The notes: generated from the sequence alone by a model not told the origin. A stretch of 64,000 nucleotides of DNA from Octopus sinensis (GCF_006345805.1 NW_021832828.1:1-64000); one strand, 5' to 3'; counted from the first letter of the stretch, positions 1 through 25,480 are shown. Numbers and translations are program-made.

Positions 1-153
1 CGTTTCTTATCGAAATGCAGTTCGAAAAAGCCCGCCATTTACATAAATATATTACGAATGAACATTTCCATGTGCTACGATGGAGGCGACAGTTGTCTGT
101 TTGGTTCCGCCGGGTATTTTTTTTTTTTATTTTTTATTTTTATCTAGTTTCAG

Positions 154-297
154 CTCGTTGGTTTTGTTTATTCTTAATATGTTTTGAATCAGTTTCACTG
201 ATGAACAAAAGACGTAGATAATACGTTAATTGCGAAATCACAGGTGGTCTGGAACTAAATTCTGTTTTTAAATGTCTTGCTTCGAGAGCTGCATTCG
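154..297 (+). other. Candidate start-codon exon (MSCFESCIR|), weakly resembling the N-terminus of M6/PLP proteolipids
   Basis: A polypyrimidine tract plus CAG acceptor lies at 151-153, ATG at 272, and a donor-like CG|GTACGA at 297/298. No downstream partner exon was found. Confidence 0.2.
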
Positions 298-385
298 GTA
301 CGATTCGTTTATTTTTGGTAGTAATGACTTTGAAAGTTCCTCCTAGCGTGTGGCATTTATGTGTAATAATGCCCTCTATATAATA

Positions 386-650
386 TAAATATATACATAT
401 ATAGATATATACATATATAATATATACATATATACGTTAAAGACTTGTTTTATTTATATTTCCTGAGCGCCATACTAATACAATTGTTCGTTTGTTTTCC
501 ACCTGCCTTCGTCTTTTGTCTATTTTCATAAAGCTTCCCGTTATATATTGTATATATATATATATACATACATACATATATATATATATTCATACATACA
601 TATATATATATATTCATACATGCTATATATATACATACATACGTATATAC

Positions 651-722
<72 letters not shown>

Positions 723-760
723 CATTATATATATATACATATACATATATATATATATTC
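386..760. repeat. (TA)n/(TACA)n microsatellite cluster
   Basis: Directly visible. It explains the YIYIY ORFs. Confidence 0.95.
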
Positions 761-1026
761 AGACTAACTGACATCGATGTGTCTTTTAGAAAATATTGTT
801 TAATGGTGTTTTCTCAACAATGAACCAAACTTTTCAAAAGGTCTGTTCAAATTTCATTTTCTTCAAAAGTAAACTGGATTTTATATCTATAGATATACAA
901 AGATGATGATGATGAGGCTTGTTTACATTGGCCCAAGACCGTGGATTTGGAGATTAGTGAAAGGGAGAGAGATCTTTTAGGGGATTCTTGGGACCAATCA
1001 CTGTAGAAAATATAAGTTGTGAGCTG

Positions 1027-1033
1027 AATAATA

Positions 1034-1082
<49 letters not shown>
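1027..1082. repeat. (AAT)n microsatellite
   Basis: Directly visible. Many similar (AAT)n/(GAT)n tracts across the window are SINE/LINE tails. Confidence 0.95.
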
Positions 1083-1083
<1 letters not shown>

Positions 1084-1097
1084 CTCCTTTCTACTAG

Positions 1098-1265
1098 AAG
1101 CACAATCGCCAAATTTGAGGGGAGGGAATGTGTCAATTACATTTACTCCAGTGTTTCATTGGTTTATTGACCCCGAAAAGATGAAAGGCAAAGTTGACCC
1201 TGGTGACATTTGAACTCAGAACATGAAGACCAACGAAATACTGCTAAGCATTTCGTGCAGTCTAC
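1098..1265 (-). mobile_element. tRNA-derived SINE, degenerate copy of the family most abundant in this window
   Basis: The reverse complement has A-box-like TGGCAGAA..TTAG and B-box-like GAGTTCAAAT motifs and an (ATT)n tail. Related copies lie at about 7635-7845, 33690-34300 (three), 36240-36430, 38030-38225, 58990-59205, 59615-59826, 60385-60596 and 62100-62220. Confidence 0.8.
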
Positions 1266-1613
1266 TAATGTTTCTGCCAACTCACTGCCTTCATTATAAT
1301 AATAATAATGGTTTAAAAGTTTGCCTGAAGAGCAGCAATTATAAAATCAGTTTATACCATAAGCACAAGGCTGGAGATTTATGGGACAAAGAGATTGGGG
1401 CAGCTATCAGCAATCAAATGATGAAATCAACACCCAGACATGACTGGTACATTTTTATTTTACCAACCCCATAAAGACCCCAGTGGGGTTTGAACCTAGA
1501 ACTTGAATTTTCTGTGACTTTAAATCACTCCAGCTAATTCATAGCCCTGGTTATTACTTCCAACATCCAGTTATTGCTTATAATTCCGAATTATTACCCA
1601 AAATCCCTAGCGA

Positions 1614-1816
1614 TTACCCACAATCCTCTGTGAAGAGTTCATCATTGTCATGGTCCAATGAATCGTCAATCAAGAATGACTGCAGCAAACACTCCATAAT
1701 AGTGTCTGTTCTCTTGTTGTAGTCAATCTGGTCCCTGAGGATCAATAGCCTATCTTCAAGGGACAGCTTGTCTCTGACCTCAGGGACACTGAAGTCTCCA
1801 GGATAAGAAATGGGGC
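1614..1816 (-). pseudogene. 3' part of an unidentified ORF interrupted by the LTR retrotransposon (ISYPGDFSVPEVRDKLSLEDRLLILRDQIDYNKRTDTIMECLLQSFLIDDSLDHDNDELFTEDCG*)
   Basis: 65 open codons end in TAA at 1616-1614. They are in frame with 7116-7354 once the element and one TSD copy are removed. Confidence 0.5.
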
Positions 1817-2232
1817 TGTAACGTGAAAGGATCTATCATCGAAGCACTGGTAGGGTGTCGAGATCCTTTCTAGTCACATACAAAATTCTTGCAGAAAACA
1901 AACAGACGAAACTCAGGTTAAAGGTGAACAGACAACTTGGTTTATGATTCATGGTTGTACGTTGTCTTATGGGGGAATAGACAGCCTCTGAGATACTGCT
2001 GGTGTTGGTCGTTGAGGTTGGTTGAAGTTGGTTGAAGCTGGTGTGTGGCTGTCAGAGCCAGGAAAACCGTGACCGATCGCAGTGCTGTCTTGAGCCGAAG
2101 AGAGAGATTTGAGGTTCGCGGGCTCGAGAGATGTTTTCCCGCACATGCGCATGGGGAAGACTTCCGGTGGCCACCCGGAAGTAGTCCCATTCTGCGCATG
2201 CGCGCCGAACCCTACACAGTAGCATCACTACA
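1817..2232 (-). repeat. 3' LTR (416 bp)
   Basis: Differs from 6699-7115 by 2 substitutions and 1 single-base indel on manual comparison. Confidence 0.97.
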
Positions 2233-2245
2233 GGGCTCCCCTCCG
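2233..2245 (-). other. Polypurine tract (CGGAGGGGAGCCC)
   Basis: Purine-rich tract directly preceding the 3' LTR on the minus strand. Confidence 0.85.
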
Positions 2246-2332
2246 AGTGCGAAGTACGGCAACCAGAATATTGTGGTGGTGCTGCAGAAAACAGAAGGCT
2301 TGCCGATCCCCCAGAAGACTTGGTACATACTA

Positions 2333-3478
2333 TTATACAATAAGAAACATTTTAAAGAAAGTTAAATGTAAATTTTTTTGAAAGTTTCTTGGGCCAATGC
2401 ACTGTTCTGCCCGATTTTGTAACATACGGTGTGCTCGGGGCACCCGTTGACGGCGAGGGTGGTGTTGTAGGAGCCGGTGAAGGTGTTTGTGCAGGTGAAG
2501 GCGTTTGTGCAGGTGAAGGCTTTGTGCAGGTGAAGGCGTTTGTGCAGGTGAAAGTGTTGTTAAAGGTGCATAGGTGGGTGTGTCAAGGTTGTCATCAAAA
2601 GATGAAGACGTCTCAAAATGTGCCTTTTTTAAACGGTCCACGGAAACGGTCTCCGAACGACCATTTATCTCAATCGTGAAAACCTTTGGTGTGCGAGAAA
2701 GCACACGAAAAGGTCCTTTATAGGGAGAAACAAGTGGGCCCTTCACAGAATCGTCCCGAACAAAAACATGCGACCAGGTGTTCATATCCGGTGGAAGATG
2801 GGACGGTGGAGATTGCTTTCTGGGAAGCATGGGCGGAAGGTTTGAAAAATATTCCCGCAGTCTGGTGACATAGGTCGCCGGATCATGGGGCGGGGAAGTG
2901 TCTGGCACCAACATCGTACCGGGCAATGCCAGTGTGGTACCATACAGCAGCTCTGCAGCAGAAAACCCCAGGTCTGCCTTGACAGCAGTCCGACAGCCGA
3001 GAAGCACAATGGGCAGAAATTCGATCCAGGACTGTGGGTCCGAAGAGGCACGAAGAGCGGCCTTGAGCTGTCTATGGAACCGCTCAACCAATCCATTAGA
3101 CGCTGGATGGTAGCTTGTGGTGTGGATATGGTGCATACCCAAAATTCGCGACAATTCGCGAAATAGCGAGGCCTCAAACTGTCGTCCACGATCAGTTGTC
3201 AATCGGGACGGGACTCCGAAGCGAGAAATCCAGTTTGAAACGAAAGCTCGCGCAACAGTCTCAGCAGAAATGTCTGCTATCGGAATGGCTTCTGGCCAGC
3301 GGGAGAAACGATCGACACAAGTTAATAGATAAGAGAACCCGCGACTCACAGGCCATGGTCCAACCAGATCGATGTGGACATGGCAAAACGGGCCTCCGTG
3401 GGGGGAAATTGTCCAAGCGGGGCACGAACGTGCCGTTGAATCTTGGATCGTTGACACTTGGAGCAGGTGCGTGTCCAA
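2333..3478 (-). CDS. Integrase catalytic core and C-terminus (frameshifted pol segment)
   Basis: [27 protein letters not shown] and [13 protein letters not shown] motifs and a GPF module. The true C-terminus (...[15 protein letters not shown]) is in a shifted frame. Confidence 0.93.
2476..2553 (-). repeat. 18-bp tandem repeat encoding (TPSPAQ)n in the integrase tail, about 4 copies
   Basis: GGTGAAGGCGTTTGTGCA units. One unit is 17 bp, which shifts the frame. Confidence 0.85.
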
Positions 3479-4431
3479 GAAGTAATTGTGCGACGCATAT
3501 TCGGCCAGAAAAACCGAGCAGTGATTAGTTTGAGGGTGGCAGCGATGCCAGGATGTGATAAGGAGTGCAGTGCTTCAAACACTGAGCGTTGATGGGTCTC
3601 AGGCACCAGTGGCCTGGGAGATCCAGTTGAAGTGTCACAAAGAATGGTGCCTTCGGCTGACGGAAGCGGAAGGTAGGAAAACTGGCAACAGGAGAACTTG
3701 GGAGAAGTTAAATCTAACGACGCCAAAGGTGGCTGCTCCTGCGATATGGCAGCTAAGTCGATAGCAGCAGGAGACGAAAGGGCGCAAACTGGAAGGCGAG
3801 AGAGAGCGTCAGCAGGAACGTTCTCTTTTCCAGGTATGTGTCGAATGTTGCTAGTAAATTGAGAGATAAAATCCAGGTGCCGAAAAGCACGGGGTGAGAG
3901 TTTGTCCGTTTTTGAAAACAGGGCAAACGTAAGGGGCTTGTGATCCGTATAGATCACAAAATCTCGCCCTTCAAGTTGATGCTGGAAATGACGAACCGAT
4001 AGATAGATCGCTAGGAGCTCACGATCAAAGGTGCTGTATCGTCGTTCAGCTGGTTGCAGTTGACGGGAAAAGAAGGCTAGAGGTCGAACATGGTCATCCA
4101 CTGTGTGTTGTAACACAGCGCCAATCGCAGTGTCCGATGCGTCCACAGTCAAAGAGAGAGAAGCACCAGGAACTGGATGTGCAAGCAAAGAAACAGAAGC
4201 CAGCTCCTTCTTAATGGACTCAAAGGCTGTCACTGCCTCAACAGAGAGGGTGACTTGACTGTCCTTTCTAGGAGAGTCCTTTAACAGCCTGGTGAGAGGT
4301 AGCAGCTTATCTGCACAACCGGGAATGAAGCGTCGGTAGAAATTGACCATCCCTAGATAATGCCTGAGGGGGTGCGATGCGTTGAATGGCATCGACTTTT
4401 GACGAGAGGGGGCTGATTCCAGTCGAATCAA
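3346..4431 (-). CDS. RT connection, RNase H and integrase zinc finger (frameshifted pol segment)
   Basis: [39 protein letters not shown] and HSLSHPG...CSKC motifs. Confidence 0.93.
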
Positions 4432-5662
4432 TATGATGCCCTAGAAAATCTAGGGAAGAGCGTCCGAAAACACACTTGTCGGGGTTTATGCGTATGCTAT
4501 ACGCGCGAAGACGCTGGAAGAGTTGAGAAAGGTGCCGGAGATGATTTTCTCGTGTGTCGCTCGCAATGAGTATGTCATCGACATAGGCAAACACAAAATC
4601 AAGACCGCGGACAACCTCATCAATGAAACGCTGGAAGGTGCTAGTAGCATTCCGCAAACCGAAACTCATGTACAAAAACTCAAAACACCCAAACGGGGTA
4701 GTGATTGCAGTTTTTGGAACGTCGGCTGGGTTGACCGGTATTTGGTGGTAAGCGCGTATCAGATCGACCTTCGAAAAAATGGTACAACCATGGAGATTTG
4801 CTGTAAAGTCCCGGAGATTTCTAATCGGATAGCGATCGGCTATTGTGACGGCATTGAGGCGTCGATAGTCTCCAACCGGGCGAAAATCAGACTCGCCCTT
4901 TCGCGCCAAATGAAGGGGAGATGCCCATGGGCTGGTGGAGGGGCGTATAAGGCCAAGTTGAAGCATGTGCTCAAACTCGGCTCTGGCCGTTTTAAGTCGG
5001 TCTGGCGCTAGGCGCCGGGGGCGTGAGAATACAGGTGGCCCATTGGTGGTGATGAAATGGAGGGTCGAGTGGGTAGGTAGGCTTTTCCGGTTTAAGGCAA
5101 TGTCCACTAGCTCCGGAAATGAAACCAAAAGAGAGTGAAAAGGGTCTCCAGAGGTGGCAACAAAGAATGTCGGGCTAAGGACCGCAGTGGTGGAACTCCC
5201 AGTCGGTGTAGAGAGCGACGTCGTGCTATCAAGAAGCCTCCGACGCCTGACATCCACCAATAGGTTAAACCTATCCAGGAAATCAGCGCCGAGAATAGGA
5301 TGCGGGATGTCAGCGATGACGAAAACCCATCGAAAGTCTCGACGAAGGTTGAGGTCGAGGTGCAGCGAAATCTGACCGTAAGTGGTTATGGGAGACGAGT
5401 CAATAGCATGCAAGACAATCGAAGAGCGCTTGGGCTTGTCTGCAGCCAGACGAAGGGGCCAGATGCTGCAACAGGAGCCGGTGTCCACCATGAAGAATGT
5501 CTTCGACACCAGATCTTTTACATAGAATGCACGATGTTTGGGAAACGAGATGGAAGAAGGTGACGTGCTCACCTCCTCCGGATTTAGTTTTCCGAGGGCT
5601 TGAAAGTGCACGGCTGGGTACACCGATCTGCCTTTTCGGCATATCTCGAATGGTACCAGCAC
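4307..5662 (-). CDS. Aspartic protease and reverse transcriptase (pol, 5' segment)
   Basis: VDTGS protease motif, DYRRLN, DLIRAYHQIP, FGLRNA and the YVDD catalytic motif. Confidence 0.95.
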   Translation of the reverse strand: MLVPFEICRKGRSVYPAVHFQALGKLNPEEVSTSPSSISFPKHRAFYVKDLVSKTFFMVDTGSCCSIWPLRLAADKPKRSSIVLHAIDSSPITTYGQISLHLDLNLRRDFRWVFVIADIPHPILGADFLDRFNLLVDVRRRRLLDSTTSLSTPTGSSTTAVLSPTFFVATSGDPFHSLLVSFPELVDIALNRKSLPTHSTLHFITTNGPPVFSRPRRLAPDRLKTARAEFEHMLQLGLIRPSTSPWASPLHLARKGESDFRPVGDYRRLNAVTIADRYPIRNLRDFTANLHGCTIFSKVDLIRAYHQIPVNPADVPKTAITTPFGCFEFLYMSFGLRNATSTFQRFIDEVVRGLDFVFAYVDDILIASDTRENHLRHLSQLFQRLRAYSIRINPDKCVFGRSSLDFLGHHIDSTGISPLSSKVDAIQRIAPPQALSRDGQFLPTLHSRLCR

Positions 5663-6384
5663 CAGCCGGAACGAGAAACAGAGTCACTCCGACTGCGGGA
5701 AATAGAGCTACTGCGACTACGAGATTGGCGTCCGATCGCACGGCACAGATCATCGATCCTCCGCGTAAGCGCGTCGATGTTCTCGGCCAGTTTATCGTTC
5801 GTCGGAGGTGTCGGGGGGATCTGTACATGCGTACAGGCCCCGCGAGGGAGATGGGCGCGAAAACTCCAACACTTTGTCGGCCATCGTGGCGATCTGGTCC
5901 ACAGACACAGCATCCAGTGCCGTGGCCAACATTGTCTGCACGTGGGCAGGCAGCCTTGAGAAAAATATCTTACGTAAGAGCGGCGCGTCAGCGGCGTTGC
6001 CGCTTAGCTCTCTTAGATGGCGCAGAAATGGGATGGAGTTCTGTCCCCTAACTGCTCGTCGGCCATCAGTTCATTAAACTGACTTTCTTCTGAGCGCGTG
6101 TTGCGACGGAGGATCTCCGCCTTTACTGACGCATATGTGGCGTCAGGATGGGGACTCACAATGAGATCCCTGACCGATGTTGCGAGCCGGGAGGGCAAAC
6201 TTGAATACAGTAGATGTAACTGCTGTTGTGGCGGAATGGTATGCGCGGCAAAGTGTGATTCCACCTGTGCAAACCACAGCCCCGCATCCCCCGTAAATGA
6301 AGGCAAACCTGAAGCCATGCCTTTGTCGGAAGGAATCTGTGAGAAGGGGGCAGAAGGTATGGTCGAGAAACGGAGAGAGAACAC
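5584..6384 (-). CDS. gag (two apparent 1-bp frameshifts), ending at a GGAAAAC-TAA gag/pol -1 slippery site
   Basis: LPSFTGDAGLWFAQVES...LGDRTPSHF(L)RHLRELS...RLPAHVQTML...CWYH..C..C. The heptamer GGAAAAC (5587-5593) shifts into the pol frame GKLNPEE. Confidence 0.88.
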
Positions 6385-6686
6385 GTGGAACGAGAAGGCA
6401 ATTCAAAATTGTGTTTGTGTGTGCACCTCGTGGGTAGCAAAAAAAAAAAAAAGAATAAGTGTGTACAAGGAAAACAAAATACAGAAAAGGAAAAATGAAT
6501 GTGTGTGTGTTTTCTTTTTTTTTTTTTTCTTTTTTTGTACTGAGTGCGATGAATAAGGTTATTTGACCCACCTCGCCGTGCTGAAAAGGAGAAAAATAGG
6601 AAAATAAATATGAATTTCCGCGCTCTTCGGCCCCCAAAAAAACCTGTTCGCTGTGTCTTCTTCTATCCTGTTCTTTTTCTCAACTA

Positions 6687-6696
6687 GGGGTCACCA
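6687..6696 (-). other. Primer binding site complementary to the tRNA-Trp 3' end (TGGTGACCCC)
   Basis: Lies 2 nt downstream of the 5' LTR. It has a 10-nt match to the canonical tRNA-Trp PBS TGGTGACCCCGACGTGAT. Confidence 0.9.
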
Positions 6697-6698
6697 AT

Positions 6699-7115
6699 TG
6701 TAACGTGAAAGGATCTATCATCGAAGCACTGATAGGGTGTCGAGATCCTTTCTAGTCACATACAAAATTCTTGCAGAAAACAAACAGACGAAACTCAGGT
6801 TAAAGGTGAACAGACAACTTGGTTTATTGATTCATGGTTGTACGTTGTCTGATGGGGGAATAGACAGCCTCTGAGATACTGCTGGTGTTGGTCGTTGAGG
6901 TTGGTTGAAGTTGGTTGAAGCTGGTGTGTGGCTGTCAGAGCCAGGAAAACCGTGACCGATCGCAGTGCTGTCTTGAGCCGAAGAGAGAGATTTGAGGTTC
7001 GCGGGCTCGAGAGATGTTTTCCCGCACATGCGCATGGGGAAGACTTCCGGTGGCCACCCGGAAGTAGTCCCATTCTGCGCATGCGCGCCGAACCCTACAC
7101 AGTAGCATCACTACA
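6699..7115 (-). repeat. 5' LTR (417 bp)
   Basis: TGTAGTG...CGTTACA on the minus strand, with AATAAA retained. Confidence 0.97.
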
Positions 7116-7354
7116 GGGCTAAGGGACAGCTTCAACTTTGATGCATGTGGTTCTAGGGAGCCACAGCCAAGCTCAACATTGCAATCAAATGTATCCTTCC
7201 TCTTCAGAATTTTCCACTCCTCCACTTCCTTACCATCATCAATACCAGCACTGCTGACACCCCTAGGGTAGAACTCAGAGTACCCGTCTCTCTCCTCTTG
7301 CCATCTGCAGATCACCTCCCACCACCGACTGCATTTCAGAAAGACTCGAACCCA
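7116..7354 (-). pseudogene. 5' part of the ORF interrupted by the LTR element (WVRVFLKCSRWWEVICRWQEERDGYSEFYPRG...SKLKLSLSP)
   Basis: 80 open codons up to the TSD, bounded upstream by an in-frame TGA. The product is not recognised. Confidence 0.45.
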
Positions 7355-7436
7355 TCACTCTTCGTACGTTCGGCACCAATTGAAGCCTTTACAGTTTCAG
7401 CCAATTGGTGGTGGTCATCATGGGTGGAATCCCGGC

Positions 7437-7543
7437 TTAAGGGCTTATCTTGGTGTAGAGATTTACTAGCAGACAAGTCTCCTGTAGTTCTTTGCTGCGG
7501 ATGTCAATGGATCGATAAAATGTAGATTCCAGGTTGCAGCTCT
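7437..7543 (-). other. Candidate terminal coding exon segment of an unidentified minus-strand transcript
   Basis: Strong acceptor TTATTTCTGTCCACAG. Phase-compatible with exon 8403-8508, giving ESCNLESTFYRSIDIRSKELQETCLLVNLYTKISP*. Confidence 0.3.
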
Positions 7544-8060
7544 CTGTGGACAGAAATAAGAAAAATGATGATGATGATGATGACGATGATGATGATGACG
7601 ATGATGATGATAATAATAATAATAATAATAATCCTTACTACTAAAGACACAAGGCCTGAAATTTTGTGGTTGGGGACTAGTCGATTACACTGACCCCAGT
7701 GTATTACTGGTACTTAATTCATCGATCTCGAAAGGATGAAAGACAAAGTCAACCTCAGCAGAATTTGAACTCAGAATGTTGCGATGGACAAAATACCGCT
7801 AAGCATTTCGTACGTTATGCTAACGATGCTGCCAGCTCATTACCTAATAATAATAATATCTTCAAATTTTACTACAAGGGCTGCTTGTGGAAGGTGGAGA
7901 TGAGTTGATTATATCGAACCCAGTTCTTGACTGGTCCTTCATTTTATCGACCCTGAAGGGTGGAAGACACAGTCAACCATTGGGGGATTTGAAATCAGAA
8001 CACAAAGAGCTGAAAGAACAATTCTGACAAATCACCATCACCCATGACCAAACAACAACA

Positions 8061-8370
8061 ACAACTATAGCCACTAATACTTACTACTATACTAAACATT
8101 AGATACTATAGTCCAAGATACACCATGTCTGAATAAAAGATAGGATGGTCACAGCCGGAACGTCTTTGATCATAGGTCTGTCTGGATCAGGACTGACCTG
8201 GGGCTAAGCAACACAACTATAGCCACTAATACTAACTACTATACTAAACATTAGATAATGTAGTCCTAGATACACCATGTCTGACTCAAAGATGGGATGG
8301 TCACAGCTGGAACATCTTTGACGAAATATCTAACTGGATCAGGATTGACCTGGGGTTAAACAACAACTAT
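8061..8370. repeat. Diverged tandem duplication, unit about 152 bp, 2 copies
   Basis: ACAACTATAGCCACTAATAC starts at 8061 and again at 8213, with colinear sequence following. Confidence 0.8.
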
Positions 8371-8649: not shown

Positions 8650-8930
8650 TCTTGCCAGGGAGTTTACCAAGGCCTCACTCTCATTTGACACAGCAGCTAC
8701 AGGCTGGAAGGGGCCCATGGCAAGCCCTGCACCAGATGGCTGAACATGATAAACGATGATCTCCAGAGGTTTGATATAATCTTGGGTGATGCAGAGCTAC
8801 TGGTACAAAGTTGCCAGGGATGGGAAGCATCAGTGGACTTGGTCAGATCTAAGCACAATGACCTCTCTAACACCATTAACCTGAGATGACTCCAGCCCTA
8901 CCAAGCAAAAGCATGAAGCAAAGTGGATGC
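8650..8930 (+). mobile_element. RTE-type LINE 3' fragment
   Basis: Degenerate GWKRPRGRPRTRW-like C-terminal motif (GWKGPHGKPCTRWL). Confidence 0.6.
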
Positions 8931-9734: not shown

Positions 9735-12700
9735 GTCATTTAAAGTCCTCTAACGTCGTGTCATTTAACGTCATTTAACGTCAATTAGCGTCATGTCCTT
9801 TGACGTCATTTAACGTAATGTCTTTAAAGTCATTTAACGTCATGTCATTTAACGTCATCTAACGTCATTTAACATCATGTCATTTAACGGCATTTAACGT
9901 CATGTCATTTAACGTCAATTAACGTCATTTAACGTCATGTAATTTAACGTCATTTGACGTCATGTCGTTTAACGTCTATTAACGTAATTTAACGTCATGT
10001 CATTTAAAGTCGTTTAAGGACATTTAACGTCATGTCATTCAAGGTCATTTAACGTCATTTAACGTCATGTTATTTAACGTCATTTAACGTCATATCATTT
10101 AACGTCATTTAACGTAATTTAACGTCATGTCATTTAACGTCATTTAACATCATGTCAATTAACGTCATGTCTATTAACGTCATTTAACGTCATTTAACGT
10201 CTTGTCTTTAAAATCATTTAACGTCATCTAACGTCATTTAACATCATGTCATTTAACGGCATTTAACGTCATGTCATTTAACGTCAATTAACGTCATTTA
10301 ACGTCATGTAATTTAACGTCATTTGACGTCATGTCGTTTAACGTCAATTAACGTCATTTAACGTCATGTCATTTAAAGTCGTTTAAGGACATTTAACGTC
10401 ATGTCATTCAAGGTCATTTAACGTCATGTCATTTAACGTCATGTTATTTAACGTCATTTAACGTCATATTTAACGTCATTTAACGTCATGTCATTTAACG
10501 TCATTTAACAACATGTCAATTAACGTCATAACATTTAACGTCATGTCTATTAACGTCATTTAACGTCATGTCATTTAACTTCATTTTACATGCCATTTAA
10601 CGTCATTTAACTTCATGTCATTTAACGTCATTTAATGTCATTTAACGTCATGTCATTTAACGTCAAAAAACGTCATTTAGCGTCATGTCATTAAACGTCA
10701 TTTAATGTCATTTATGGTCATGTCATTTAACATCATTCAACGTCATGTCATTTAACGTCAATTAACGTCATTTAGCGTCATTTGACGTTAAGTCATATAA
10801 TGTCATTTAGCTTCATGGCATTTAACGTCATTTCACGTCATTTAACGTCATGTCATTTAACGTCGTTTAACGTCGTTTAACATCATTTAACGTCATTTAA
10901 CGTCATGCCATTTAACGTCATTTAACGTCATGTCATTTCAGGTAATTTAACGTCATTTAACGTCATGTCATTTAGCGTCATTAAACGTCATGTCATGTAA
11001 CGCCATTTAACGTCATGTCATTGCAAGTAATTTAACGTCATTTAACGAAATGTCATTTAACGTCATTTAAATTCATTTAAAGTCATGTCATTTAAGGTCA
11101 TGTCATTTAACGTCATGTCATTTAAAGTCATGTCATTTAACGTCATCTAACGTCATGTCATTTAACGTAATTTAAAGTCATGTCATTTAATGTTATTTAA
11201 CGTCATGTCATTTAATTTCACCTAACGTCGTGTCATTTGACGACATGTCATATAAAGTGATTTAATATCATGTATTTAACGTCATTTTATGTCATTTAAC
11301 GTCATATTACGTCATGTATTTAATGTCATTTAAGCGTCATGTCATTTAACTTCATTTAACTATACGTACGTCAGTATTTAACGTCGTTTTGTGTCGTTAT
11401 CAAACGTCATGCATTTAACATCATTCAACATCATTTAACGTCATGTCATTTAACGTAATTTAACGTCATTTAACGTTATGTCATTTCATGTCATTTAGCG
11501 TTCATATCATTTAAAGTCAGTTAACGTATTTTAGCGTCACGTCATTTAACATCATTTAACGTCATATCAATTTAACGTCCATTTCACGTCAAGTCATTTA
11601 AAGTCATTTAACGTCATGTCATTTAATGTCATTTAACGTCATTTAACGTCATGTCATTAACGACATTTAACGTCATGCATTTTTTTAAAGTTATTTAACG
11701 TCAGTTAACGTCATGTCATTTAACATCATTTAAAGCCATGTCATTTAACGTCATGTCATTTAACGTCATGTCATTTAACGTCATGTAACGCCATGTCATT
11801 TAACGACATGACATTTAACGTCATGTCATTTAACGTCATTCAACGTCATTTAACGTTATGTCATTTAATGTCATTTAACGACATGTCATTTAACGTCATG
11901 TCATTTAACTTCATTTAACGTCATGTCATTTAACGACATTTAACGTTATTTAACGTAATGTCATTTAACGTCACGTCATCTAACGTCCTTTAACGTCATG
12001 TCATTTAACGTCATTTAACTTCATGTCATTTAACGTCATTTGACGTCATGTCATTTAAAGTCATTCAACGTCATGTCATTTAACGTCATTTAACGCATTT
12101 AACGCGATGTCGTTTAACGTCATGTCATTTAACGTCATGTCATTTAACGTCATGTCATTTAATATCATGTCATTTAACGTCCTTTGACGTCATTTAATGT
12201 CATGTTATTTAACGTCATTTAACGTCATGTTATGTAACGTCATTTACCGCCATTTTACATCATGTCATTCAATGTCAAGTAACTTCATGTCATTTAAAGT
12301 CATGTAACGTCATTTAACGTCATGTCATTTAAGGTCAATTAACGTCATTTTATTTAACGTCATTTAACGTCAATTACCGTCATGTCATTTAACTTCATTT
12401 CACGTCATTTAACGTCATGTCATTTAACGTCATGTCACTTAACGTCATTTAACGTCATTTAACATCAAGTCATTTAACGTAATTTAACATCATTTAACGT
12501 CCTGTCATTTTATTTAACGTCATTTAACGTCAATTACCGTCATGTCATTTAACTTCATTTCACGTCATTTAACGACATGTCATTCAACGTCATGTTACTT
12601 AACATTATTTAACGTCATTTAACGTTATGTCACTTAACGTCATGTCATGTTACGTGGTTTATCGTCATTTAACGTCATGTCATTTAACGTCATTTAACGT

Positions 12701-15700
12701 CATGTCATTTAACCTCATTTAACGTTATTTGACGTAATGTCATTTAACGTCATGTCGTGTAACGTCGTTTAACGTCATTTAACGTCAAGTCATTTAACGT
12801 CATTTAACCTCATTTAACGTTAATTAACGTAATGTCATTTAACGTCATTTAACGTCATGTTATTTAACGTCATTTAAAATCATGTATGTAACGTAATTTA
12901 ATGTCATTTGACGTCATGTATTTTAACGTCAATTAACGTCATGTCATTTAAAGTTATTTAACGTCATGTCATCTAATGTCATTCAACGAATTTAACTTCA
13001 TGTCATTTAACCTTCTTTGACGTCATTTAACGTCATGTTATGTAACGTCATTTAACGTTATTTTACATAATGTCATTCTACGACAAGTAACTTCATGTCA
13101 TTTAACGTCATGCAACGTCATTTAACGTCATGTCATTTAACTTCATTTTACATGTCATTTAACGTCATTTAACTTCATGTCATTAAACGTCATTTAATGT
13201 CATTTAACGTCATGTCATTTAACGTCAAAAAACGTCATTTAGCGTCATGTCATTTAACGTCATTTAGCGTCATGTCATTTAACTTCATTTAACATCATTT
13301 ATGGTCATGTCATTTAACATCATTCAACGTCATGTCATTTAACATCAATTAATGTCATGTCATTTGACGTCATTTAGCGTCATTTGACGTTAAGTCATAT
13401 AATGTCATTTAGCTTCATGGCATTTAACGTCATTTCACGTCATTTAACGTCATGTCATTTAACGTCGTTTAACATCATTTAACGTCATTTAACGTCATGC
13501 CATTTAACGTCATTTAACGTCATGCCATTTAACGTCATTTAACGTCATGTCATTTCAGGTAATTTAACGTCATTTAACGTCATGTCATTTAGCGTCATTA
13601 AACGTCATGTCATGTAACGCCATTTAACGTCATATCATTGCAAGTAATTTAACGTCATTTAACGCAATGTCATTTAACGTCGTTTAAATTCATTTAAAGT
13701 CATGTCATTTAACGTCATGTCATTTAACGTCATTTAAAGTCATGTCATTTAACGTCATTTAACGTCATGTCATTTAACGTAATTTAAAGTCATGTCATTT
13801 AATGTTATTTAACGTCATGTCATTTAATTTCACTTAACGTCGTGTCATTTAACGACATGTCATATAAAGTGATTTAACATCATGTATTTAACGTCATTTT
13901 ATGTCATTTAACGTCATATTACGTCATGTCATTTAACGTCATTTAGCGTCATGTCATTTAACTTCATTTAACTATACGTAACGTCATGTAATTTAACGTC
14001 GTATAACGTCATTTAACGTCATGGCATTTAACATCATTCAACATCATTTAACGTCATGTCATTTAACGTAATTTAACGTCATTTAACCTTATGTCATTTC
14101 ATGTCATTTAGCGTCATATCATTTAAAGTCATTTAACGTATTTTAGCGTCATGTCATTTAACATCATTTAACGTCATATCAATTAACGTCATTTAACGTC
14201 AAGTCATTTAAAGTCATTTAACGTCATGTCAATTAATGTCATTTAACGTCATGTCATTTAACGTCATTTAACGTCATGTCATTTAACGACATTTAACGTC
14301 ATGTCATTTAAAGTTATTTAACGTCAGTTAACGTCATGTCATTTAACATCATTTAACGCCATGTCATTTAACGTCATGTCATTTAACGTCATGTCATTTA
14401 ATGTCATTTAACGACATGACATTTAACGTCATGTCATTTAACGTCATTCAACGTCATTTAACGACATGTCATTTAACGTCATGTCATTTAACTTCATTTA
14501 ACGTCATGTCATTTAACGACATTTAACGTAATGTCATTTAACGTCATTTAACGTCACGTCATTTAACGTCACGTCATCTAACGTCCTTTAACGACATGTC
14601 ATTTAACGTCATTTAACTTCATGTCATTTAACGTCATTTGACGTCATGTCATTTAAAGTCATTCAACGTCATGTCATTTAACGTCATTTAACGCATTTAA
14701 CGCGATGTCGTTTAACGTCATGTCATTTAACGTCATGTAATTTAACGTCATGTCATTTAACGTCCTTTGACGTCATTTAATGTCGTGTTATTTAACCTCA
14801 TTTAACGTCATGTTATGTAACGTCATTTACCGCCATTTTACATCATGTCATTCAACGTCAAGTAACTTCATGTCATTTAAAGTCATGTAACGTCATTTAA
14901 CGTCATGTCATTTAAGGTCAATTAACGTCATTTTATTTAACGTCATTTAACGTCAATTACCGTCATGTCATTTAAATTCATTTCACGTCATTTAACGTCA
15001 TGTCATTCAACGTCAAGTCATTTAACGTAATTTAACATCATTTAACGTCCTGTCATTTTATTTAACGTCCTGTCATTTTATTTAACGTCATTTAACGTCA
15101 ATTACCGTCATGTCATTTAACTTCATTTCACGTCATTTAACGACATGTTATTTAACATTATTTGACGTCATTTAACGTTATGTCACTTAACGTCATGTCA
15201 TGTTACGTGGTTTATCGTCATTTAACGTCATGTCATTTAACGTCATTTAACCTAATTTAACGTTATTTGACGTAATGTCATTTAACGTCGTGTCGTGTAA
15301 CGTCGTTTAACGTCATTTAACCTCATTTAACGTTAATTAACGTAATGTCATTTAACGTCATTTAACGTCATGTTATTTAACGTCATTTAAAATCATGTAA
15401 TTTAACGTAATTTAATGTCATTTGACGTCATGTATTTTAACGTCAATTAACGTCATGTCATTTAAAGTTATTTAACGTCATGTCATTCAACGTCATTTCA
15501 CGTCATTTAACGTCATGTCATCTAATGTCATTTAACGAATTTAACTTCATGTCATTTAACGTCATGTCATTTAACCTTCTTTGATGTCATTTAACGTCAT
15601 GTTATGTAACGTCATTTAACGTTATTTTACATCATGTCATTCAACGACAAGTAACTTCATGTCATTTAACGTCATGCAACGTCATTTAACGTCATGTCAT

Positions 15701-18700
15701 TTAAGGTCATTTAACGTCATTTCATTTAACGTCATTCAACGTCATTTAACGTCATGTCATTTAACCTCAATTTTACGTCATGTCCTTTTACGTCATGGAA
15801 TTTAACGTCATTTAACATCATACCATTTAACGTCATTCAACGTCATGTCAATTAACGTCAATTCATTTAACATCATTTAACTTCATATCATTTAACGTCA
15901 TTTTACATCATGTCATATAACGGCATTTGATGTCATATCATTTAACGTAATTTAACGTCTTGTCATTAACGTCATTTAACATCATGTCATTTAACCTCAT
16001 TTAACGTCATTGAACGTCCTGTCACTTAACGTCATGTCACTTAACGTCATGTCATTTAACGTCATTTAGCGTCATGTCATTTAACGTCATTTACTGTCAT
16101 TTAACGTCATGTCATATAACGTCATTTAATATAATTTAACGTCATGTCATTTAACGCCCTTCAACATCATTTAACGTTATGTCATTTAATGACGTGTCAT
16201 TTAAATGTTATGCCATTTAACTTCATTTAACGTCATGTCATTTAACGTCATTTAACGTTATTTAACCTCATGCCATTTAACGTCATGTTATTCAACGTCA
16301 TTTAACGTCATGTCATTTAACGTCATGTCATTTACCGTCATGACATTTGACGTCATTTAATGTCATGTCATATAACGTCATTTAACGTAATATAATTTAT
16401 TGTCATTTAGTGTCATGTCATTTAGAGTCATTTAACGTCATGTCATTTAACGTCATATAACGTCATATCATTTAATGTTATTTAACGTCATATAACGTCA
16501 TTTAGCGTCATGTTATGTAACGTCATTTAACGTCATTTTACGTCATGTCATTTAACGTCATGTAAAATCATTTAACGTCATTTCATTAAAGGTCATTTAA
16601 CGTCATTGTATTTAACATCATTCAACGTAATTTAACGTCATCTCATTTAACGTCATTTAGCATTATGCCATTTAACGTCATTCAACGTCACGTCATTTAA
16701 CGTCATGTCATTTAACGGCAGTTGTTGCCATGTCATTTAACGTCATTTAACGTTATGTCATTTAACCTCATGTCAATCAACGTCATTTAACATCACGCCA
16801 TGTCATTTAACGTCATTTAACGTCACATCATTTAACGTCATGTAAATTAACGTCATTGAACATCATTTAACGTCATGTACTTTAACGTCATTTAACGTCA
16901 TGTCATTTAATGTCATCTAACGAAATGTCATTTAACGTTATGTCATTTAAGGTCATGTCATTTAATGTCATTCAACGACATGCCATTTAACGTCATGTCA
17001 TTTAATGTCACTTAACGACATTTAACGTTATGTCATTTAACGTTATTCAACGTCATTTAATGTCCTTTAACGTCATGTCATTTAACGTTATTTAACGTAA
17101 TATTATTTAACGTAATTTAACATCATGTCATTTAACGTCATTTAAGGTCATGTCATTTAACGTCCTTTAAAGTCATGTCATTTAAAGTCATTTAACTTCA
17201 TGTCATTTAACGTCATTTTACGTCATGTCATTTAACGTCATTTAACGTCATGTCATTTAACGCCATTTAACATCATGTCATTCAACGTCATTTCACGTCA
17301 TTTAACATCATGTAATTTAACGTCATTTAACGCATTTAACGTCATGTCATTTAACGTTCTTTGACGTCATTTAACGTCATGTTTCTAACGTCATTTAACG
17401 TCATGTTATGTAACGTCATTTGCCGTCATTTTACGTCTGTCATTTAACGTCAAGTAACTTCATGTCATTTAAAGTCATGTAACGTCATGTCATTTAAGGT
17501 CATCTCACCTCATTCCATTTAACGTCATTTAACGCATTTAACGTCATGACATTTAACGTCATGTCATTTAACGTCATGTCATTTATGTCATGTCATTACA
17601 CGTCATTTAACGTCATGTTATGCAACATCATATCATTTAACGTCATTTAACATCATGTCATTTAACGTCATTTCAATTAACGTCATTTCATTTAACATCA
17701 TTTTATGTCATTTCATTTAACGTCATGTCATTTAACGGCATTTAATGACATGTCATTGAACGTCAATTAACATCCTTTAATGTCATGTCATTTAACGTCA
17801 TTTAACGTCAAGGATCATCATGTCATTTAACGTCATTTAGCATTATTTCGCTTAACGTAATTTAACGTCTTTTAACGTCATGTCAATAAAATCATTTTAC
17901 GTCATGTCACTTAACGTCATTTAACGTCATGTCATTGAAAGTCATGTCATTTAATGTCATTTAACGTCATGTCATTTAATGTCATTTAACGACATTTCAT
18001 TTAACGTCAATTAACGTCATGTCATTTAATGTCAATAAACGTTGTCATTTAACGTCTTTTAACGTCGTTTACCGTCATTTAACGTCATGTCATTTAACGT
18101 CTTTTAACGTCGTTTACCGTCATTTAACGTCATGTCATTTAACGTCATGTCATTTCACGTCATTTAGCCTCATGTCATTTAACGTCATGTCATTTAACAT
18201 CATTTAACGTCATGTCATTTCACGTTATTCAGCCTCATGTCATTTAACATCATTTAACGTCATTTATCGTCATATCATCTAAAGTCATTCAAATTCATGT
18301 CATTTAACGTCCTTTAACATCATTTAAAGTCAAATTATTTAACGTCATGTTACGTAGCGTCATTTAACGTCATTTTACGTCATGTCAATCAAAGTCAAGT
18401 AACTCCATGTCAATTAACGTCATGTAACGTTCTTTAACGTCATATTATTTAAGGTCATTTAACGTCATTTTATTTAATGTCATTCAACGTCATTTTACGT
18501 CATTTAACATCATGCCATTTAACGTCAAGTCATTTGACGTCATGTCATTTAACGTCATTTAACATCATGTCATTTAACGTCATGTTATGTAACGTCATTA
18601 AACGTCATGTCATTCAACGTCAAGTAACTTCATGTCATTTAAAGTCATGTAACGTCATTTAACGTCATGTCATTTAGAGTCATTTTACGTCATTTTATTT

Positions 18701-21700
18701 AACGTTATTTAACCTCATGTCATTTAACTTCACTTAACGTCATGTCATTTAACGTCATTTAACTTCATGTCATTTAACGTCATGTCATTTAACGTCATGA
18801 CACTTAAGGTAATTTAACGCCATGTCATTTAAAGTAATTTAACGTCACATCATTTAAAGTCATTTAGTGTCATGTCATTTAACGTCCTTTAACATCATTT
18901 ACCGTCATTTAAAGACATGTAATTTACCGTCATTTAAAATCATTTAATGTCTTGTCATATAACATCACGTCATTCTAAGTCATTTAATGTCATGTCATTC
19001 ATCATCACTCAACATCATTTTACGTCATTTAACGCATTTAACGTCATGTCATTTGCCGTCATATTACGTCGTCATTTAACATCATGTCATTTTACGTCAT
19101 TTAACGTCCTTTAACATCATTTAACGTCATGTCATTTAATATCATTTAACTTCATTTAACGTCATGTCATTTAACTTAATTTAACGTCATCTAACATATC
19201 ATTTAGCGTCATGTAATTTAACATCAGGTCATTTAACATCATTTAACGTCGTATCATTTAACGTCAAGTCATTTAACGTCATTAAAAGTTCTTTAACGTC
19301 ATGTCATTTAACGTCATTTAGCGAGATGTCATTTAACGACATGTCATTTAACGTCATTTAAGCTCTTGTCCATAACGTCATTTAATGTCACGTCATTTCT
19401 TTTAACGTCATATAACGTCATTCAACGTCATGTCATTTAACGTCATTTAGCGTCATGTCATTTGACGTCATGTCATTTAACGTCACGTCACATAACGTCA
19501 TGTCATTTAACATAATTTAATGTCATGTCATTTAACGTCCTTTAACGTCATGTCATTTAATGTCATGTCATTTAACGTCCTTTAACGTCATGTCATTTAA
19601 GGTCATGTCATAACGTCATTTAACGTCATGTCATTTAACATTGTCATTATCGTCATTTAACCTCATGTCATTTAACGTCATGTCCCTTAACGTCATGTCA
19701 TTTAACGTCATTTAACATCATTTAACTTCTTGTCATTTAACGACATGTCACTTAACGTCATGTCATTTAACGTCATTTTACGTTGTCATTTAACGTCGTT
19801 TAACGTCATTTAACATCATTTAACGTCATATCATCTAACGTCATGTCATTTAAAGTCATTTAACGTCATTTAACATCCTGTCATTTAAAGTCATGACATT
19901 CAACGTCATTTCACGTCATTAAACGCAGTTAACGTCATGTCATTTAACGTCCTTTGACGTCATTTAACGTCATGTCATTCATCATCACTCAACATCATTT
20001 TACGTCATTTAACGTCATGTCATTTGCCGTCATATTACGTCGTCATTTAACATCATGTCATTTTACGTCATTTAACGTCCTTTAACATCATTTAACGTCA
20101 TGTCATTTAACTTCATTTAACGTCATGTCATTTAACTTAATTTAACGTCATCTAACATATCATTTAACGTCATGTAATTTAACATCAGGTCATTTAACAT
20201 CATTTAACGTCGTATCATTTAACGTCAAGTCATTTAACGTCATTAAAAGTTCTTTAACGTCATGTCATTTAACGTCATTTAGCGAGATGTCATTTAACGA
20301 CATGTCATTTAACGTCATTTAAGCTCTTGTCCATAACGTCATTTAATGTCACGTCATTTCTTTTAACGTCATATAACGTCATTTCATTTAGCGTCATTTA
20401 ACGTCATGTCATGTAACGGCATTTAACGTCATGTCATTTGACGTCATGTTACTTAACGTCATGTCATTTAACATAATTTAATGTCATGTCATTTAACGTC
20501 CTTTAACGTCATGTCATAACGTCATTTAACGTCATGTCATTTAACATTATGTCATTTATCGTCATTTAACCTCATGTCATTTAACGTCATGTCCCTTAAC
20601 GTCATTTAACATCATGTCATTTAACGTCATTTAACTTCTTGTCATTTAACGTCATGTCATTTAACGTCATTTTACGTTATGTCATCTAACGTCACGTCGT
20701 TTTACGTCATTTAACGTAATGTCATTTAACATCATTTAACGTCATATCATCTAACGTCATGTCATTTAACATCCTGTCATTTAAAGTCATTTAACGTCAT
20801 TTCACGTCATTAAACACAGTTAACGTCATGTCATTTAACGTCCTTTGACGTCATGTTATTTAACGTCATTTAACGTCATTTACCGTTATTTTACCTCGTC
20901 ATTCAAGTAACAGCATGTCATTTAAAGACATGTAACGTCATTTAACGTCATTTTACATCATTTAACGTCATGTCATTTTACTTCATTTAACGTCATGTCA
21001 CTTAACGTCATTTAACGTCATGTCACTTAACGTCATGTCATTTAATGTCATTTAACGACATGTCATGTAACATGTCATGTAACGTCATGTCATATAACGT
21101 CATGTTATTTAACGTCATTTCATTTAACATCATTTAACGTCATGTCATTTAACGGCATTTAAATTCATTTCATTTAACGTAAATTAACGTCATTTGACTT
21201 CATGTCATTTAACGTCAGTTAAAGTCATGTCATTTAACGTCATGTCAATGTACGTCATGTCATTTAAGTTCATGTCATTTAACGTCATGTAAAGTCATGT
21301 AATTTAACGTCATTTAACTTTATTTAACGTCATGTCAATGAACGTCATGTCATTTAACGTCATGTAATTTAACGTCATGTCATTTAACGTCATGTCATTC
21401 AACGTATTTAACGTCATTTAAGACATTTAATGTCATTAAACGCAGTTAACGTCATGTCATTTAACGTCTTTTGACGTCATTTAACATTGTTATTTAACGT
21501 CATGTTATGTAACGTCATTTACCGTGATTTTACGTCATGTCATTTAAAGACATGTAACGCCACTTAACGTCATGTCATTTAATGTCATTTAACGACGTCA
21601 TTTAACATCATGTCATATAACGTCATTTCATTTAACATCATTTAACGTCATGTCATTTCACGTCATTTAACGGTATTTAAATTTATTTCATTTGACGTAA

Positions 21701-21896
21701 ATTAACGTCATTTAACTTCATGTCATTTAACGTCATTTAACTTTAATGTCATGTCAATGAACGTCATGTCATTTAACTTCATGTCATTTAACGTCATTTA
21801 AAGTCATGTAATTTAACGTCATGTCATTTAAAGACATTTACCGTCATGTCGTTCAACGTATTTAACGTCATTTAATGCATTTAACGTCCCTTGACG
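9735..21896. repeat. 12.2-kb satellite built from GTCAT (5 bp) and GTCATTTAAC (10 bp) units in irregular 10/15/25-bp combinations
   Basis: Directly visible, with higher-order duplications of about 0.37, 2.6, 0.97 and 0.5 kb. Confidence 0.98.
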
Positions 21897-22545
21897 TGGC
21901 TGAAGATTGTTTTTTATCGCAACATGTTGAATATCTGACAAGGCATCGTCTGGGCAGCAGCCATCTATGCTGGATCTGGTATTCTCCCGCTATCCAAGAT
22001 CAGTGTCAGTCGTATCTGTGTGCACCCCTCTTGCCAAGAGTGATCATGCGGTCCTGAAGTTCGTCATGCACACAACTTTTTCTATGCCCACGACTACTTC
22101 GCTGTCACTTAGTCTTCTCTACAATTAATCTTGAAATTCTAACCGAGGCTTCCGCGCTTCTGGACTGGCAATCCCTGATGACGTTGTCCTCAGTTGACGA
22201 ACTATGGTCATCCCTCAAAGCATATGTAATCTGGTTGACTGACCAGGCAGTTCCCGTTGGGCTTCCCCAGAAGAAACACAAGCCCTGGGTGACGAAGAAG
22301 GTTAAACGAGAACTTCGACTCAGAGATATTGCTTGGGCTGAATTAAAAAATCTGGATTCGACTGCAGCTTTTGAGGTATACAAAACTCAACGAGACCGAG
22401 CCGTGAAAATTGAAAAGGAAGAACGCTTCAGTTATGAATACAAAATCGCGGCAAACGCCAGTAGCAATCCAAAAACCTTCTTTGCCCATGTCCAACGGAA
22501 TTCCCGCTTGAACAACCAAATTGCAGCGTTGGTAGACTCGAGAAT
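21890..22545 (+). mobile_element. CR1/L2-group LINE fragment (APE endonuclease C-terminus and linker)
   Basis: LDVAEDCFLSQHVE, LDLVF and AKSDHAVL across frames, followed by KPWVTKKVKRELRLRDIAW...NPKTFFAHV. Confidence 0.85.
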
Positions 22546-23445: not shown

Positions 23446-23452
23446 GTATATA

Positions 23453-25436: not shown

Positions 25437-25480
25437 GGAAGGCGATGTTAAACGATGATGATGATATATATACATATATA

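What the first reader, a model, noticed from the sequence alone, without database searches (positions are those of the whole stretch)
1614..7354. Young retrotransposon splits a hidden 145-codon ORF that is restored in frame on excision
Removing 1817-7115 and one GGGC copy joins ...AAG CTG TCC CTT AGC CC to C ATT TCT TAT CCT GGA... This gives one stop-free frame of 80 + 65 codons ending ...DELFTEDCG* at 1614. The ORF track cannot show it. The product is not recognisable and has an acidic C-terminus. It could be a knocked-out exon of a lineage-specific gene, possibly still polymorphic given near-identical LTRs, or an older repeat ORF. An in-frame TGA at about 7357 means it needs its own acceptor (e.g. 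TTTCTGAAATGCAG) or is a pseudogene.
Basis: partly seen in the sequence, partly recalled or inferred. Interest (0 to 1): 0.7.

Follow-up and report, generated by a model that had tools for sequence, protein, structure and literature searches.

The report
Octopus retrotransposon splits an orphan ORF
A recently inserted jumping gene in the Octopus sinensis genome interrupts a 145-codon open reading frame, but that frame has no start codon, no relatives and no gene-like context, so this is most likely an ordinary insertion into non-genic DNA.

Summary
A 5,299-bp LTR retrotransposon (1817-7115) carries 416/417-bp LTRs that differ by 2 substitutions and 1 indel, and it is flanked by a GGGC target-site duplication. 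Removing it and one GGGC restores a 145-codon stop-free minus-strand frame (7354..7120 + 1816..1617, TAA at 1616-1614, in-frame TGA at 7357-7355).

The window is Octopus sinensis contig VCDQ01001843.1, positions 1-64000. The element is Ty3/gypsy-type, lies on the same strand as the ORF, and has a broken gag-pol frame at three or more places.

The ORF is unusual but not compelling. A frame this long across the junction arises in about 2% of shuffles, and its codon-position bias has P of about 0.02. It has:
- one internal Met and no start codon;
- only a mediocre splice acceptor, with no compatible upstream exon within 2.4 kb;
- no Pfam match;
- no real homologue among 5.8 billion clustered or 1.84 billion exhaustively searched proteins, which include annotated O. 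sinensis proteins;
- no second copy in 75 kb;
- a low-confidence structure model.

It sits in about 0.7 kb of single-copy DNA between SINE copies, 25 kb downstream of a CDK2AP2-like gene. The likeliest reading is a young Ty3-like insertion into a non-genic orphan ORF. A knocked-out lineage-specific exon is not excluded (about 0.2). No empty-site orthologue or expression data could be reached.

The parts
7120..7354 (-). 5' part of the split ORF (78 1/3 codons, WVRVFLKCSRWW...KLKLSLSP)
   Evidence: Translation of the joined flanks. tblastn of the peptide back to the window gives 7354-7112.
1614..1816 (-). 3' part of the split ORF (66 2/3 codons, ...ISYPGDF...DELFTEDCG) plus the TAA stop at 1616-1614
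7355..7357 (-). In-frame TGA that closes the frame upstream. The ORF has no start codon; its only Met is at residue 119.
7329..7342 (-). The exon would start at 7328 in phase 2, and the upstream 20 nt are 60% pyrimidine.
   Evidence: This is a pattern match only, with no expression evidence.
1813..1816 (.). Target-site duplication GGGC, left copy
7116..7119 (.). Target-site duplication GGGC, right copy
6699..7115 (-). 5' LTR of the element (417 bp; reads TGTAGTG...CGTTACA on the minus strand)
   Evidence: LTR alignment with 3 differences. 99.28% by blastn.
1817..2232 (-). 3' LTR of the element (416 bp)
6679..6696 (-). Primer-binding site TGGTGACCCCTAGTTGAG, 2 nt inside the 5' LTR
   Evidence: Read from the sequence. 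The matching tRNA was not identified, and the window holds no tRNA gene.
2233..2244 (-). Polypurine tract GGAGGGGAGCCC abutting the 3' LTR
   Evidence: Read from the sequence.
6013..6384 (-). gag-side ORF with DUF7041 (PF23055). The frame changes at about 6025-6028 relative to homologues.
   Evidence: Pfam E=1.8e-14. tblastn with P0119.
4430..4900 (-). Reverse transcriptase domain (RVT_1) in ORF 4307-5662
   Evidence: Pfam E=6.8e-32. 2653 homologues; the best named one is O. sinensis LOC115212164 at 78% identity.
3856..4236 (-). RNase H domain, in a different frame from RT. The frame break is at about 4337-4368.
   Evidence: Pfam RT_RNaseH_2 and RT_RNaseH. Frame change from tblastn.
3439..3606 (-). 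Integrase zinc-binding (H2C2) domain
   Evidence: Pfam E=1.4e-18.
3104..3388 (-). Integrase catalytic core (rve), back in the RT frame. The frame break is at about 3385-3460.
   Evidence: Pfam E=6.6e-15. tblastn with P0058.
1052..1304 (-). SINE-like interspersed repeat with an (ATT)n tail. It bounds the single-copy segment on the downstream side. A further diverged SINE-like stretch lies at about 1340-1545.
   Evidence: blastn self-comparison finds more than 10 copies in the window. Sequence reading.
7601..7858 (-). SINE-like interspersed repeat with an (ATT/ATC)n tail. It bounds the single-copy segment on the upstream side.

Best explanation
A 5.3-kb Ty3/gypsy-type LTR retrotransposon integrated recently into about 0.7 kb of single-copy, moderately GC-rich DNA between SINE copies. 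The site is about 25 kb downstream of a CDK2AP2-like gene on an unplaced Octopus sinensis contig.

Shown:
- Its integrase made a 4-bp staggered cut, which left the GGGC duplication.
- The element lies on the same strand as the open frame it splits.

Inferred:
- The 145-codon frame is not a working gene. It is either a decaying leftover of some unclassified, once-coding sequence or a fortuitous open frame. I weight the two about equally.
- The insertion therefore destroyed nothing of consequence.
- The age is about 0.7 My (0.1-2.4 My). This comes from 2 LTR substitutions and a rate taken from an O. vulgaris repeat study.
For: Element anatomy:
- LTRs, TSD, PBS, PPT and the RT-RNaseH-IN order.
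- Recently active Ty3-like families are already reported in the sister species O. vulgaris: 9 families and 147 insertions (PMC13282606).

The ORF looks non-genic:
- It has no start codon and one internal Met.
- It has no compatible upstream exon within 2.4 kb. The strong donor at 8403 gives 9 open codons in the needed phase.
- It has no Pfam family, even after extending it by a hypothetical 1-nt frame correction.
- The word-indexed search of 5.8 billion clusters gave no hit.
- The exhaustive phmmer search of 1.84 billion representatives gave only two bacterial repeat proteins. They match one 12-residue motif several times over.
- Those databases do hold annotated O. sinensis proteins (P0005, P0123), so a paralogue would have been seen.
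- The AlphaFold model has mean pLDDT 42.5.
- The neighbourhood is a patchwork of SINEs, a LINE-like fragment, a satellite and tandem arrays.
Against: - The frame is longer than local chance predicts (P about 0.02).
- Its codon-position composition is coding-like (chi-square P about 0.018, A2 P about 0.003).
- Its GC content is 0.47, against 0.33-0.44 in the flanks.
- Together these suggest it is or recently was coding.
- A gene disrupted in the reference individual would not be annotated there.
- A gene restricted to the O. vulgaris/sinensis lineage would have no database relatives.
- An AATAAA lies 157 nt past the stop, and a usable acceptor exists.
Confidence: 0.6

Rival explanations
1. The ORF is the 3'-terminal coding exon of an unannotated gene restricted to the octopus lineage. 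In the sequenced individual it was knocked out by a sense-oriented Ty3-like insertion that may still be polymorphic.
For: - The ORF is restored exactly in frame across a clean TSD.
- Length P is about 0.02 and 3-periodicity P about 0.02.
- GC content is elevated.
- There is a plausible acceptor at 7328 and an AATAAA 157 nt after the stop.
- The LTRs are 99.3% identical, so the insertion is young enough to be segregating.
Against: - No homologue exists in any proteome searched, including annotated O. sinensis, and none in Argonauta hians.
- No compatible upstream exon lies within 2.4 kb, and a 12-kb satellite lies just beyond that.
- The structure prediction has low confidence.
- The acceptor's pyrimidine tract is only 60%.
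Confidence: 0.2
2. The true ORF is longer than it appears. Residual long-read indel errors, or real recent frameshifts, hide a longer gene or mobile-element ORF. For example, one extra T in the TTT run at about 7340 would fuse a 55-codon upstream frame to the ORF and give about 195 codons.
For: - The upstream frame 7337-7500 is open for 55 codons and overlaps the ORF start.
- The inserted element shows three or more frame breaks despite near-identical LTRs. That fits indel errors in an assembly described as PacBio-based in the reference list of PMC13282606.
Against: - The extended 195-aa product still has no ATG and no Pfam match.
- The extension runs straight into a SINE tail at about 7560-7600.
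- No read data were available to test for errors.
Confidence: 0.1
3. The ORF belongs to an older, multi-copy interspersed repeat (a gag, ORF1 or accessory ORF of an unclassified octopus transposon), and the young element is nested within it.
For: - The composition is coding-like without any gene context.
- About 66% of the O. vulgaris genome is annotated as repeats, including unknown repeats (PMC13282606).
- Fast-evolving transposon ORFs of this kind often lack detectable homologues (my own knowledge).
Against: - No second copy exists in the 64-kb window or in a further 10.6 kb of the contig, at DNA or protein level.
- No terminal inverted or direct repeats bound the segment, other than unrelated SINE copies.
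- It shows no similarity to any transposon protein in 1.84 billion representatives, nor to the gag-side frames of the inserted element or its homologues.
Confidence: 0.15

Closest known systems
Ty3/gypsy-type (Metaviridae-like) LTR retrotransposons, including the recently active 'Ty3-like' families reported in Octopus vulgaris (PMC13282606)
   Same: - TG...CA LTRs of about 416 bp and a 4-bp TSD.
- A PBS starting TGG 2 nt from the 5' LTR, and a PPT.
- RT-RNaseH-integrase order with the H2C2 zinc domain.
- Pol 50-55% identical to many animal gypsy-type pols and 78% identical to an O. sinensis predicted protein.
   Different: - This copy's gag-pol is interrupted by frame changes at about 6025, 4350 and 3400.
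- Pfam detects no protease domain or CCHC knuckle.
- There is no room for env.
- Its family assignment within octopus repeat libraries was not testable here.
Classical LTR-retrotransposon insertion alleles that disrupt genes, e.g. copia in Drosophila white-apricot and IAP insertions in mouse (from my own knowledge)
   Same: An LTR element sits in sense orientation inside an open reading frame, with a target-site duplication that allows the pre-insertion allele to be reconstructed exactly.
   Different: In those cases the interrupted sequence is a known, expressed gene with a phenotype. Here the interrupted frame has no start codon, no homologue and no expression evidence.
Non-genic or orphan ORFs ('proto-genes') in intergenic DNA (from my own knowledge)
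   Same: - A lone open frame of modest length.
- No homologues and a low-confidence predicted structure.
- It is surrounded by repeats.
   Different: The frame has a somewhat stronger codon-position bias and is longer than the local null predicts (P about 0.02 for each).

Membership tests
Ty3/gypsy-type LTR retrotransposon (the inserted element) | Two long terminal repeats in direct orientation ending TG...CA | tested here: met
   1817-2232 and 6699-7115 are 99.3% identical, with TGTA...TACA termini.
Ty3/gypsy-type LTR retrotransposon (the inserted element) | Short target-site duplication (4-6 bp) | tested here: met
   GGGC at 1813-1816 and at 7116-7119.
Ty3/gypsy-type LTR retrotransposon (the inserted element) | Pol domain order RT - RNase H - integrase | tested here: met
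   RVT_1, RT_RNaseH(_2), Integrase_H2C2 and rve occur in that order on the minus strand. The region is collinear with homologous pols.
Ty3/gypsy-type LTR retrotransposon (the inserted element) | PBS complementary to a tRNA 3' end, and a PPT | tested here: inconclusive
   TGGTGACCCCTAGTTGAG (6679-6696) and GGAGGGGAGCCC (2233-2244) sit at the expected places. The priming tRNA was not identified.
Ty3/gypsy-type LTR retrotransposon (the inserted element) | Aspartic protease and a gag with a nucleocapsid motif | tested here: inconclusive
   Only DUF7041 is found on the gag side. No protease or zf-CCHC appears at E up to 1.
Autonomous (coding-competent) copy of that element | Uninterrupted gag-pol reading frame(s) | tested here: not met
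   Frame changes relative to homologues lie at about 6025-6028, 4337-4368 and 3385-3460. Assembly indel errors cannot be excluded.
Protein-coding exon of a host gene (the split ORF) | Start codon, or a splice acceptor with a compatible upstream exon | tested here: inconclusive
   There is no ATG before residue 119. The acceptor-like site at 7328 is in phase 2. The only strong donor within 2.4 kb (8403) has 9 open codons in the matching phase.
Protein-coding exon of a host gene (the split ORF) | Homologues (paralogues or orthologues) or a known domain | tested here: not met
   Pfam gave none. The best PDB match has E=0.26. The search of 5.8 billion clusters gave none. The exhaustive search of 1.84 billion representatives gave only spurious repeat hits.
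Protein-coding exon of a host gene (the split ORF) | Coding-type sequence statistics | tested here: met
   The signal is weak: chi-square periodicity P about 0.018, A2 P about 0.003, and length across the junction P about 0.02.
Protein-coding exon of a host gene (the split ORF) | Expression and purifying selection (dN/dS below 1 in relatives) | not testable with these tools
   No transcriptome, read set or other octopus genome region within reach. The fetchable locus stopped 15 kb short of the site.
ORF of an older interspersed repeat (the split ORF) | Multiple copies in the genome | tested here: inconclusive
   No second copy in about 75 kb. That is far too little sequence to exclude a low- or medium-copy family in a genome of this size.
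ORF of an older interspersed repeat (the split ORF) | Similarity to transposon proteins, or bounding terminal repeats or TSD | tested here: not met
   There is no protein similarity. No inverted or direct terminal repeats bound the segment apart from unrelated SINE copies.

The most novel reading that the evidence does not exclude
The 145-codon frame is the terminal exon of a young orphan gene restricted to the Octopus vulgaris/sinensis lineage. The reference individual carries a natural knock-out allele, made less than about 2.4 My ago by a Ty3-like insertion that may still be segregating. That would give a ready-made presence/absence polymorphism for studying both recent LTR activity and orphan-gene loss in a cephalopod.
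Probability: 0.12. Interest if true: 0.4.

Novelty: new member of a known kind. Interest (0 to 1): 0.17.

Why it matters
If the frame were a real gene, this would be a datable natural knock-out by a young Ty3-like element in an octopus, and it could be genotyped. Transposon activity in octopuses is currently debated. As the evidence stands, it is one more recent LTR-retrotransposon insertion into repeat-rich intergenic DNA. Its practical value is as a candidate presence/absence marker for recent Ty3-like activity in O. sinensis, and as an example that an in-frame restoration on excision is not by itself evidence of a gene.

Tried and rejected
1. Pfam on the peptide, on a 195-aa version extended by a hypothetical 1-nt shift, and on the overlapping plus-strand frame: nothing.

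2. Word-indexed homologue search: nothing.

3. Exhaustive phmmer search: two bacterial proteins built of W-x-D-E-R-D-G-N-x-E-I-Y repeats at E about 1e-5. I rejected them as homologues. Four repeats of the target all hit the same short stretch of the query (residues 13-44), which inflates the score.

4. PDB sequence search: best E 0.26.

5. AlphaFold single-sequence model: pLDDT 42.5. It is too poor for a fold search, so I ran none.

6. Looking for an empty or filled allele elsewhere:
- A 26-mer from the left flank in JGI metagenomes gave no match.
- An exact look-up of the neighbouring CDK2AP exon product was not on record.
- The homologue route identified the contig, but the fetched locus ends at record position 22733, about 15 kb short of the site.

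7. Similarity of the ORF to the inserted element's own gag-side frames or to 120 gypsy-type homologues: nothing significant. The best was 28 aa at 39% identity.

8. Terminal repeats around the single-copy segment: none.

9. Rfam, tRNA and bacterial promoter/terminator scans: empty or irrelevant.

10. Procedural disclosure. In some searches my scripts wrote the element's span (whole, internal part) to scratch files for BLAST runs. Nothing beyond coordinates was printed.
Full report
**What is there**

- The window is the first 64 kb of Octopus sinensis contig VCDQ01001843.1 (assembly GCA_006345805.1).
- A locus fetched through the neighbouring CDK2AP2-like gene covers record positions 22733-74607. 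It is 100% identical to window 22733-64000, with the same numbering.
- Positions 1817-7115 are a complete LTR retrotransposon of 5,299 bp.
- Its LTRs (1817-2232, 416 bp; 6699-7115, 417 bp) differ by two substitutions and one 1-nt indel. They end TG...CA and are flanked by a GGGC duplication at 1813-1816 and 7116-7119.
- No other copy of the LTR or of the internal part lies in the window, and no other LTR copy lies in the next 10.6 kb of the contig.

**Orientation and type of the element**

- All coding capacity is on the minus strand. In order it is a gag-side DUF7041, RVT_1, RNase H, the integrase H2C2 zinc domain and the integrase core.
- TGGTGACCCCTAGTTGAG lies 2 nt inside the 6699-7115 LTR, where a primer-binding site should be.
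- GGAGGGGAGCCC abuts the 1817-2232 LTR, where a polypurine tract should be.
- The element is therefore Ty3/gypsy-type, minus-oriented, and on the same strand as the frame it splits.
- Its RT region has 2,653 homologues. These are mostly animal gypsy-type pols at 50-55% identity. The best named one is an O. sinensis predicted protein at 78%.
- Against those homologues the reading frame changes at about 6025-6028, 4337-4368 and 3385-3460. Pfam finds no protease.
- The copy is therefore young but not coding-intact, unless these breaks are residual long-read indel errors. I could not test that.

**Age (inferred)**

- Two substitutions in 416 bp give K = 0.0048.
- I took the rate from the O. vulgaris repeat study, where JC 0.09 corresponds to 25 My (PMC13282606).
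- This gives about 0.7 My, with a Poisson range of 0.1-2.4 My.
- The same paper reports 9 recently active Ty3-like families with 147 insertions in O. vulgaris. Recent activity of this kind of element in octopus is therefore already known.

**The split ORF**

- Joining 1..1816 to 7120.. gives one minus-strand stop-free frame of 145 codons. It runs 7354..7120 + 1816..1617, with TAA at 1616-1614 and an in-frame TGA at 7357-7355.
- The split is 78 1/3 + 66 2/3 codons.
- The product is acidic (pI 4.6), with 10 D/E and no K/R in the last 30 residues. Its only Met is at residue 119.

**Is it more than chance?**

- In dinucleotide-preserving shuffles of the local sequence, the best of six frames across the junction reaches 145 codons in 1.8-2.5% of trials.
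- No other position in about 37 kb of unmasked window is spanned by such a frame.
- I compared the ORF with simulated stop-free sequences of the same dinucleotide content. Its codon-position composition is more periodic: chi-square P about 0.018, A at position 2 P about 0.003, RNY P about 0.05. G1 and R1 are not significant.
- GC content is 0.47, against 0.33-0.44 nearby.
- The sequence therefore looks mildly coding-like, but neither test is strong, and I chose the second one after the fact.

**Is it a gene?**

- Nothing else supports that reading. Pfam finds nothing and the best PDB match has E 0.26.
- The 5.8-billion-cluster search finds nothing.
- The exhaustive search of 1.84 billion representatives finds only two bacterial repeat proteins. 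Their repeated W-x-D-E-R-D-G-N-x-E-I-Y unit matches one short stretch of the query several times. I reject these as homologues.
- These databases do contain annotated O. sinensis proteins (P0005, P0123) and Argonauta proteins. A paralogue or an annotated orthologue would have been seen.
- The structure model is of low confidence (pLDDT 42.5).
The one strong donor upstream within 2.4 kb (8403, GAG|GTAAGT) has only 9 open codons in the compatible phase.
- Beyond that donor lie a LINE-like fragment and a 12-kb satellite.
- An AATAAA lies 157 nt after the stop, but inside SINE-like sequence.

**Is it an old repeat ORF?**

- I could not show that either. There is no second copy at DNA or protein level in about 75 kb.
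- No terminal repeats bound the segment.
- It shows no similarity to transposon proteins, nor to the inserted element's gag-side frames.
- The ORF occupies most of a single-copy stretch of about 0.7 kb. SINE-like copies with (ATT)n tails bound that stretch at 1052-1304 (plus a diverged one at about 1340-1545) and at 7601-7858.
- Genome-wide copy number could not be tested.

**Verdict**

- The best reading (0.6) is an ordinary, recent Ty3-like insertion into non-genic DNA. The open frame is either a decaying remnant of unclassified coding sequence or a lucky open frame.
- A knocked-out lineage-specific exon remains possible (about 0.2).
- The decisive tests were out of reach. They are empty-site orthologues in O. 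vulgaris and O. bimaculoides, genome-wide copy number, transcript evidence and genotyping of other individuals.

- In some searches my scripts wrote the element's span to scratch files for BLAST. Only coordinates were printed.

Noticed in passing
window 9735-21888: A 12-kb satellite built on GTCATTTAAC-type 10-bp units, with higher-order periods of 25, 35 and 110. It is strongly strand-asymmetric: GC skew about -0.2 to -0.29 and GC content 0.31.
   Followed up: no
window 54642-57113: A 51-bp tandem array of 48.5 copies at 98% identity, inside the range of the CDK2AP2-like gene and presumably intronic. It creates spurious ORFs of up to 616 codons and a chance Pfam BESS hit. A 49-bp x 9 array follows at 57768-58207.
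   Followed up: partly
window 32733-33074 (minus): The last coding exon of a CDK2AP2-like gene. It encodes 113 aa, is preceded by a good acceptor, and is 100% identical to O. sinensis isoform X1 (P0123, 154 aa). The gene range is record 32733-64607. This identified the window as GCA_006345805.1 VCDQ01001843.1:1-64000.
   Followed up: yes
window 22000-26400: A cluster of degraded mobile-element ORFs. It includes a Tc1/mariner HTH_Tnp_Tc3_2 domain (25750-26274, minus), a reverse-transcriptase fragment (24338-24826, minus), and unassigned open frames of 235 and 178 codons. A zf-RVT fragment lies at 37015-37419.
   Followed up: partly
window 1052-1304, 7601-7858, 33675-34002, 36241-36453, 42849-43009, 59026-59221, 59601-59815, 60377-60589, 62079-62215 and others: An abundant SINE-like repeat of about 250 bp with an (ATT)n tail. 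Copies are 70-82% identical to each other and mostly in one orientation. ARAGORN and Rfam do not recognise a tRNA-like head.
   Followed up: partly
window 41026-41357 and 8054-8365: Two short tandem duplications: a 62-bp unit x 5.3 at 87% identity, and a 152-bp unit x 2 at 86% identity.
   Followed up: no
window 8660-8900: A stretch whose plus strand reads like the 3' end of a LINE ORF2 tail. This impression comes only from reading the sequence and was not tested.
   Followed up: no
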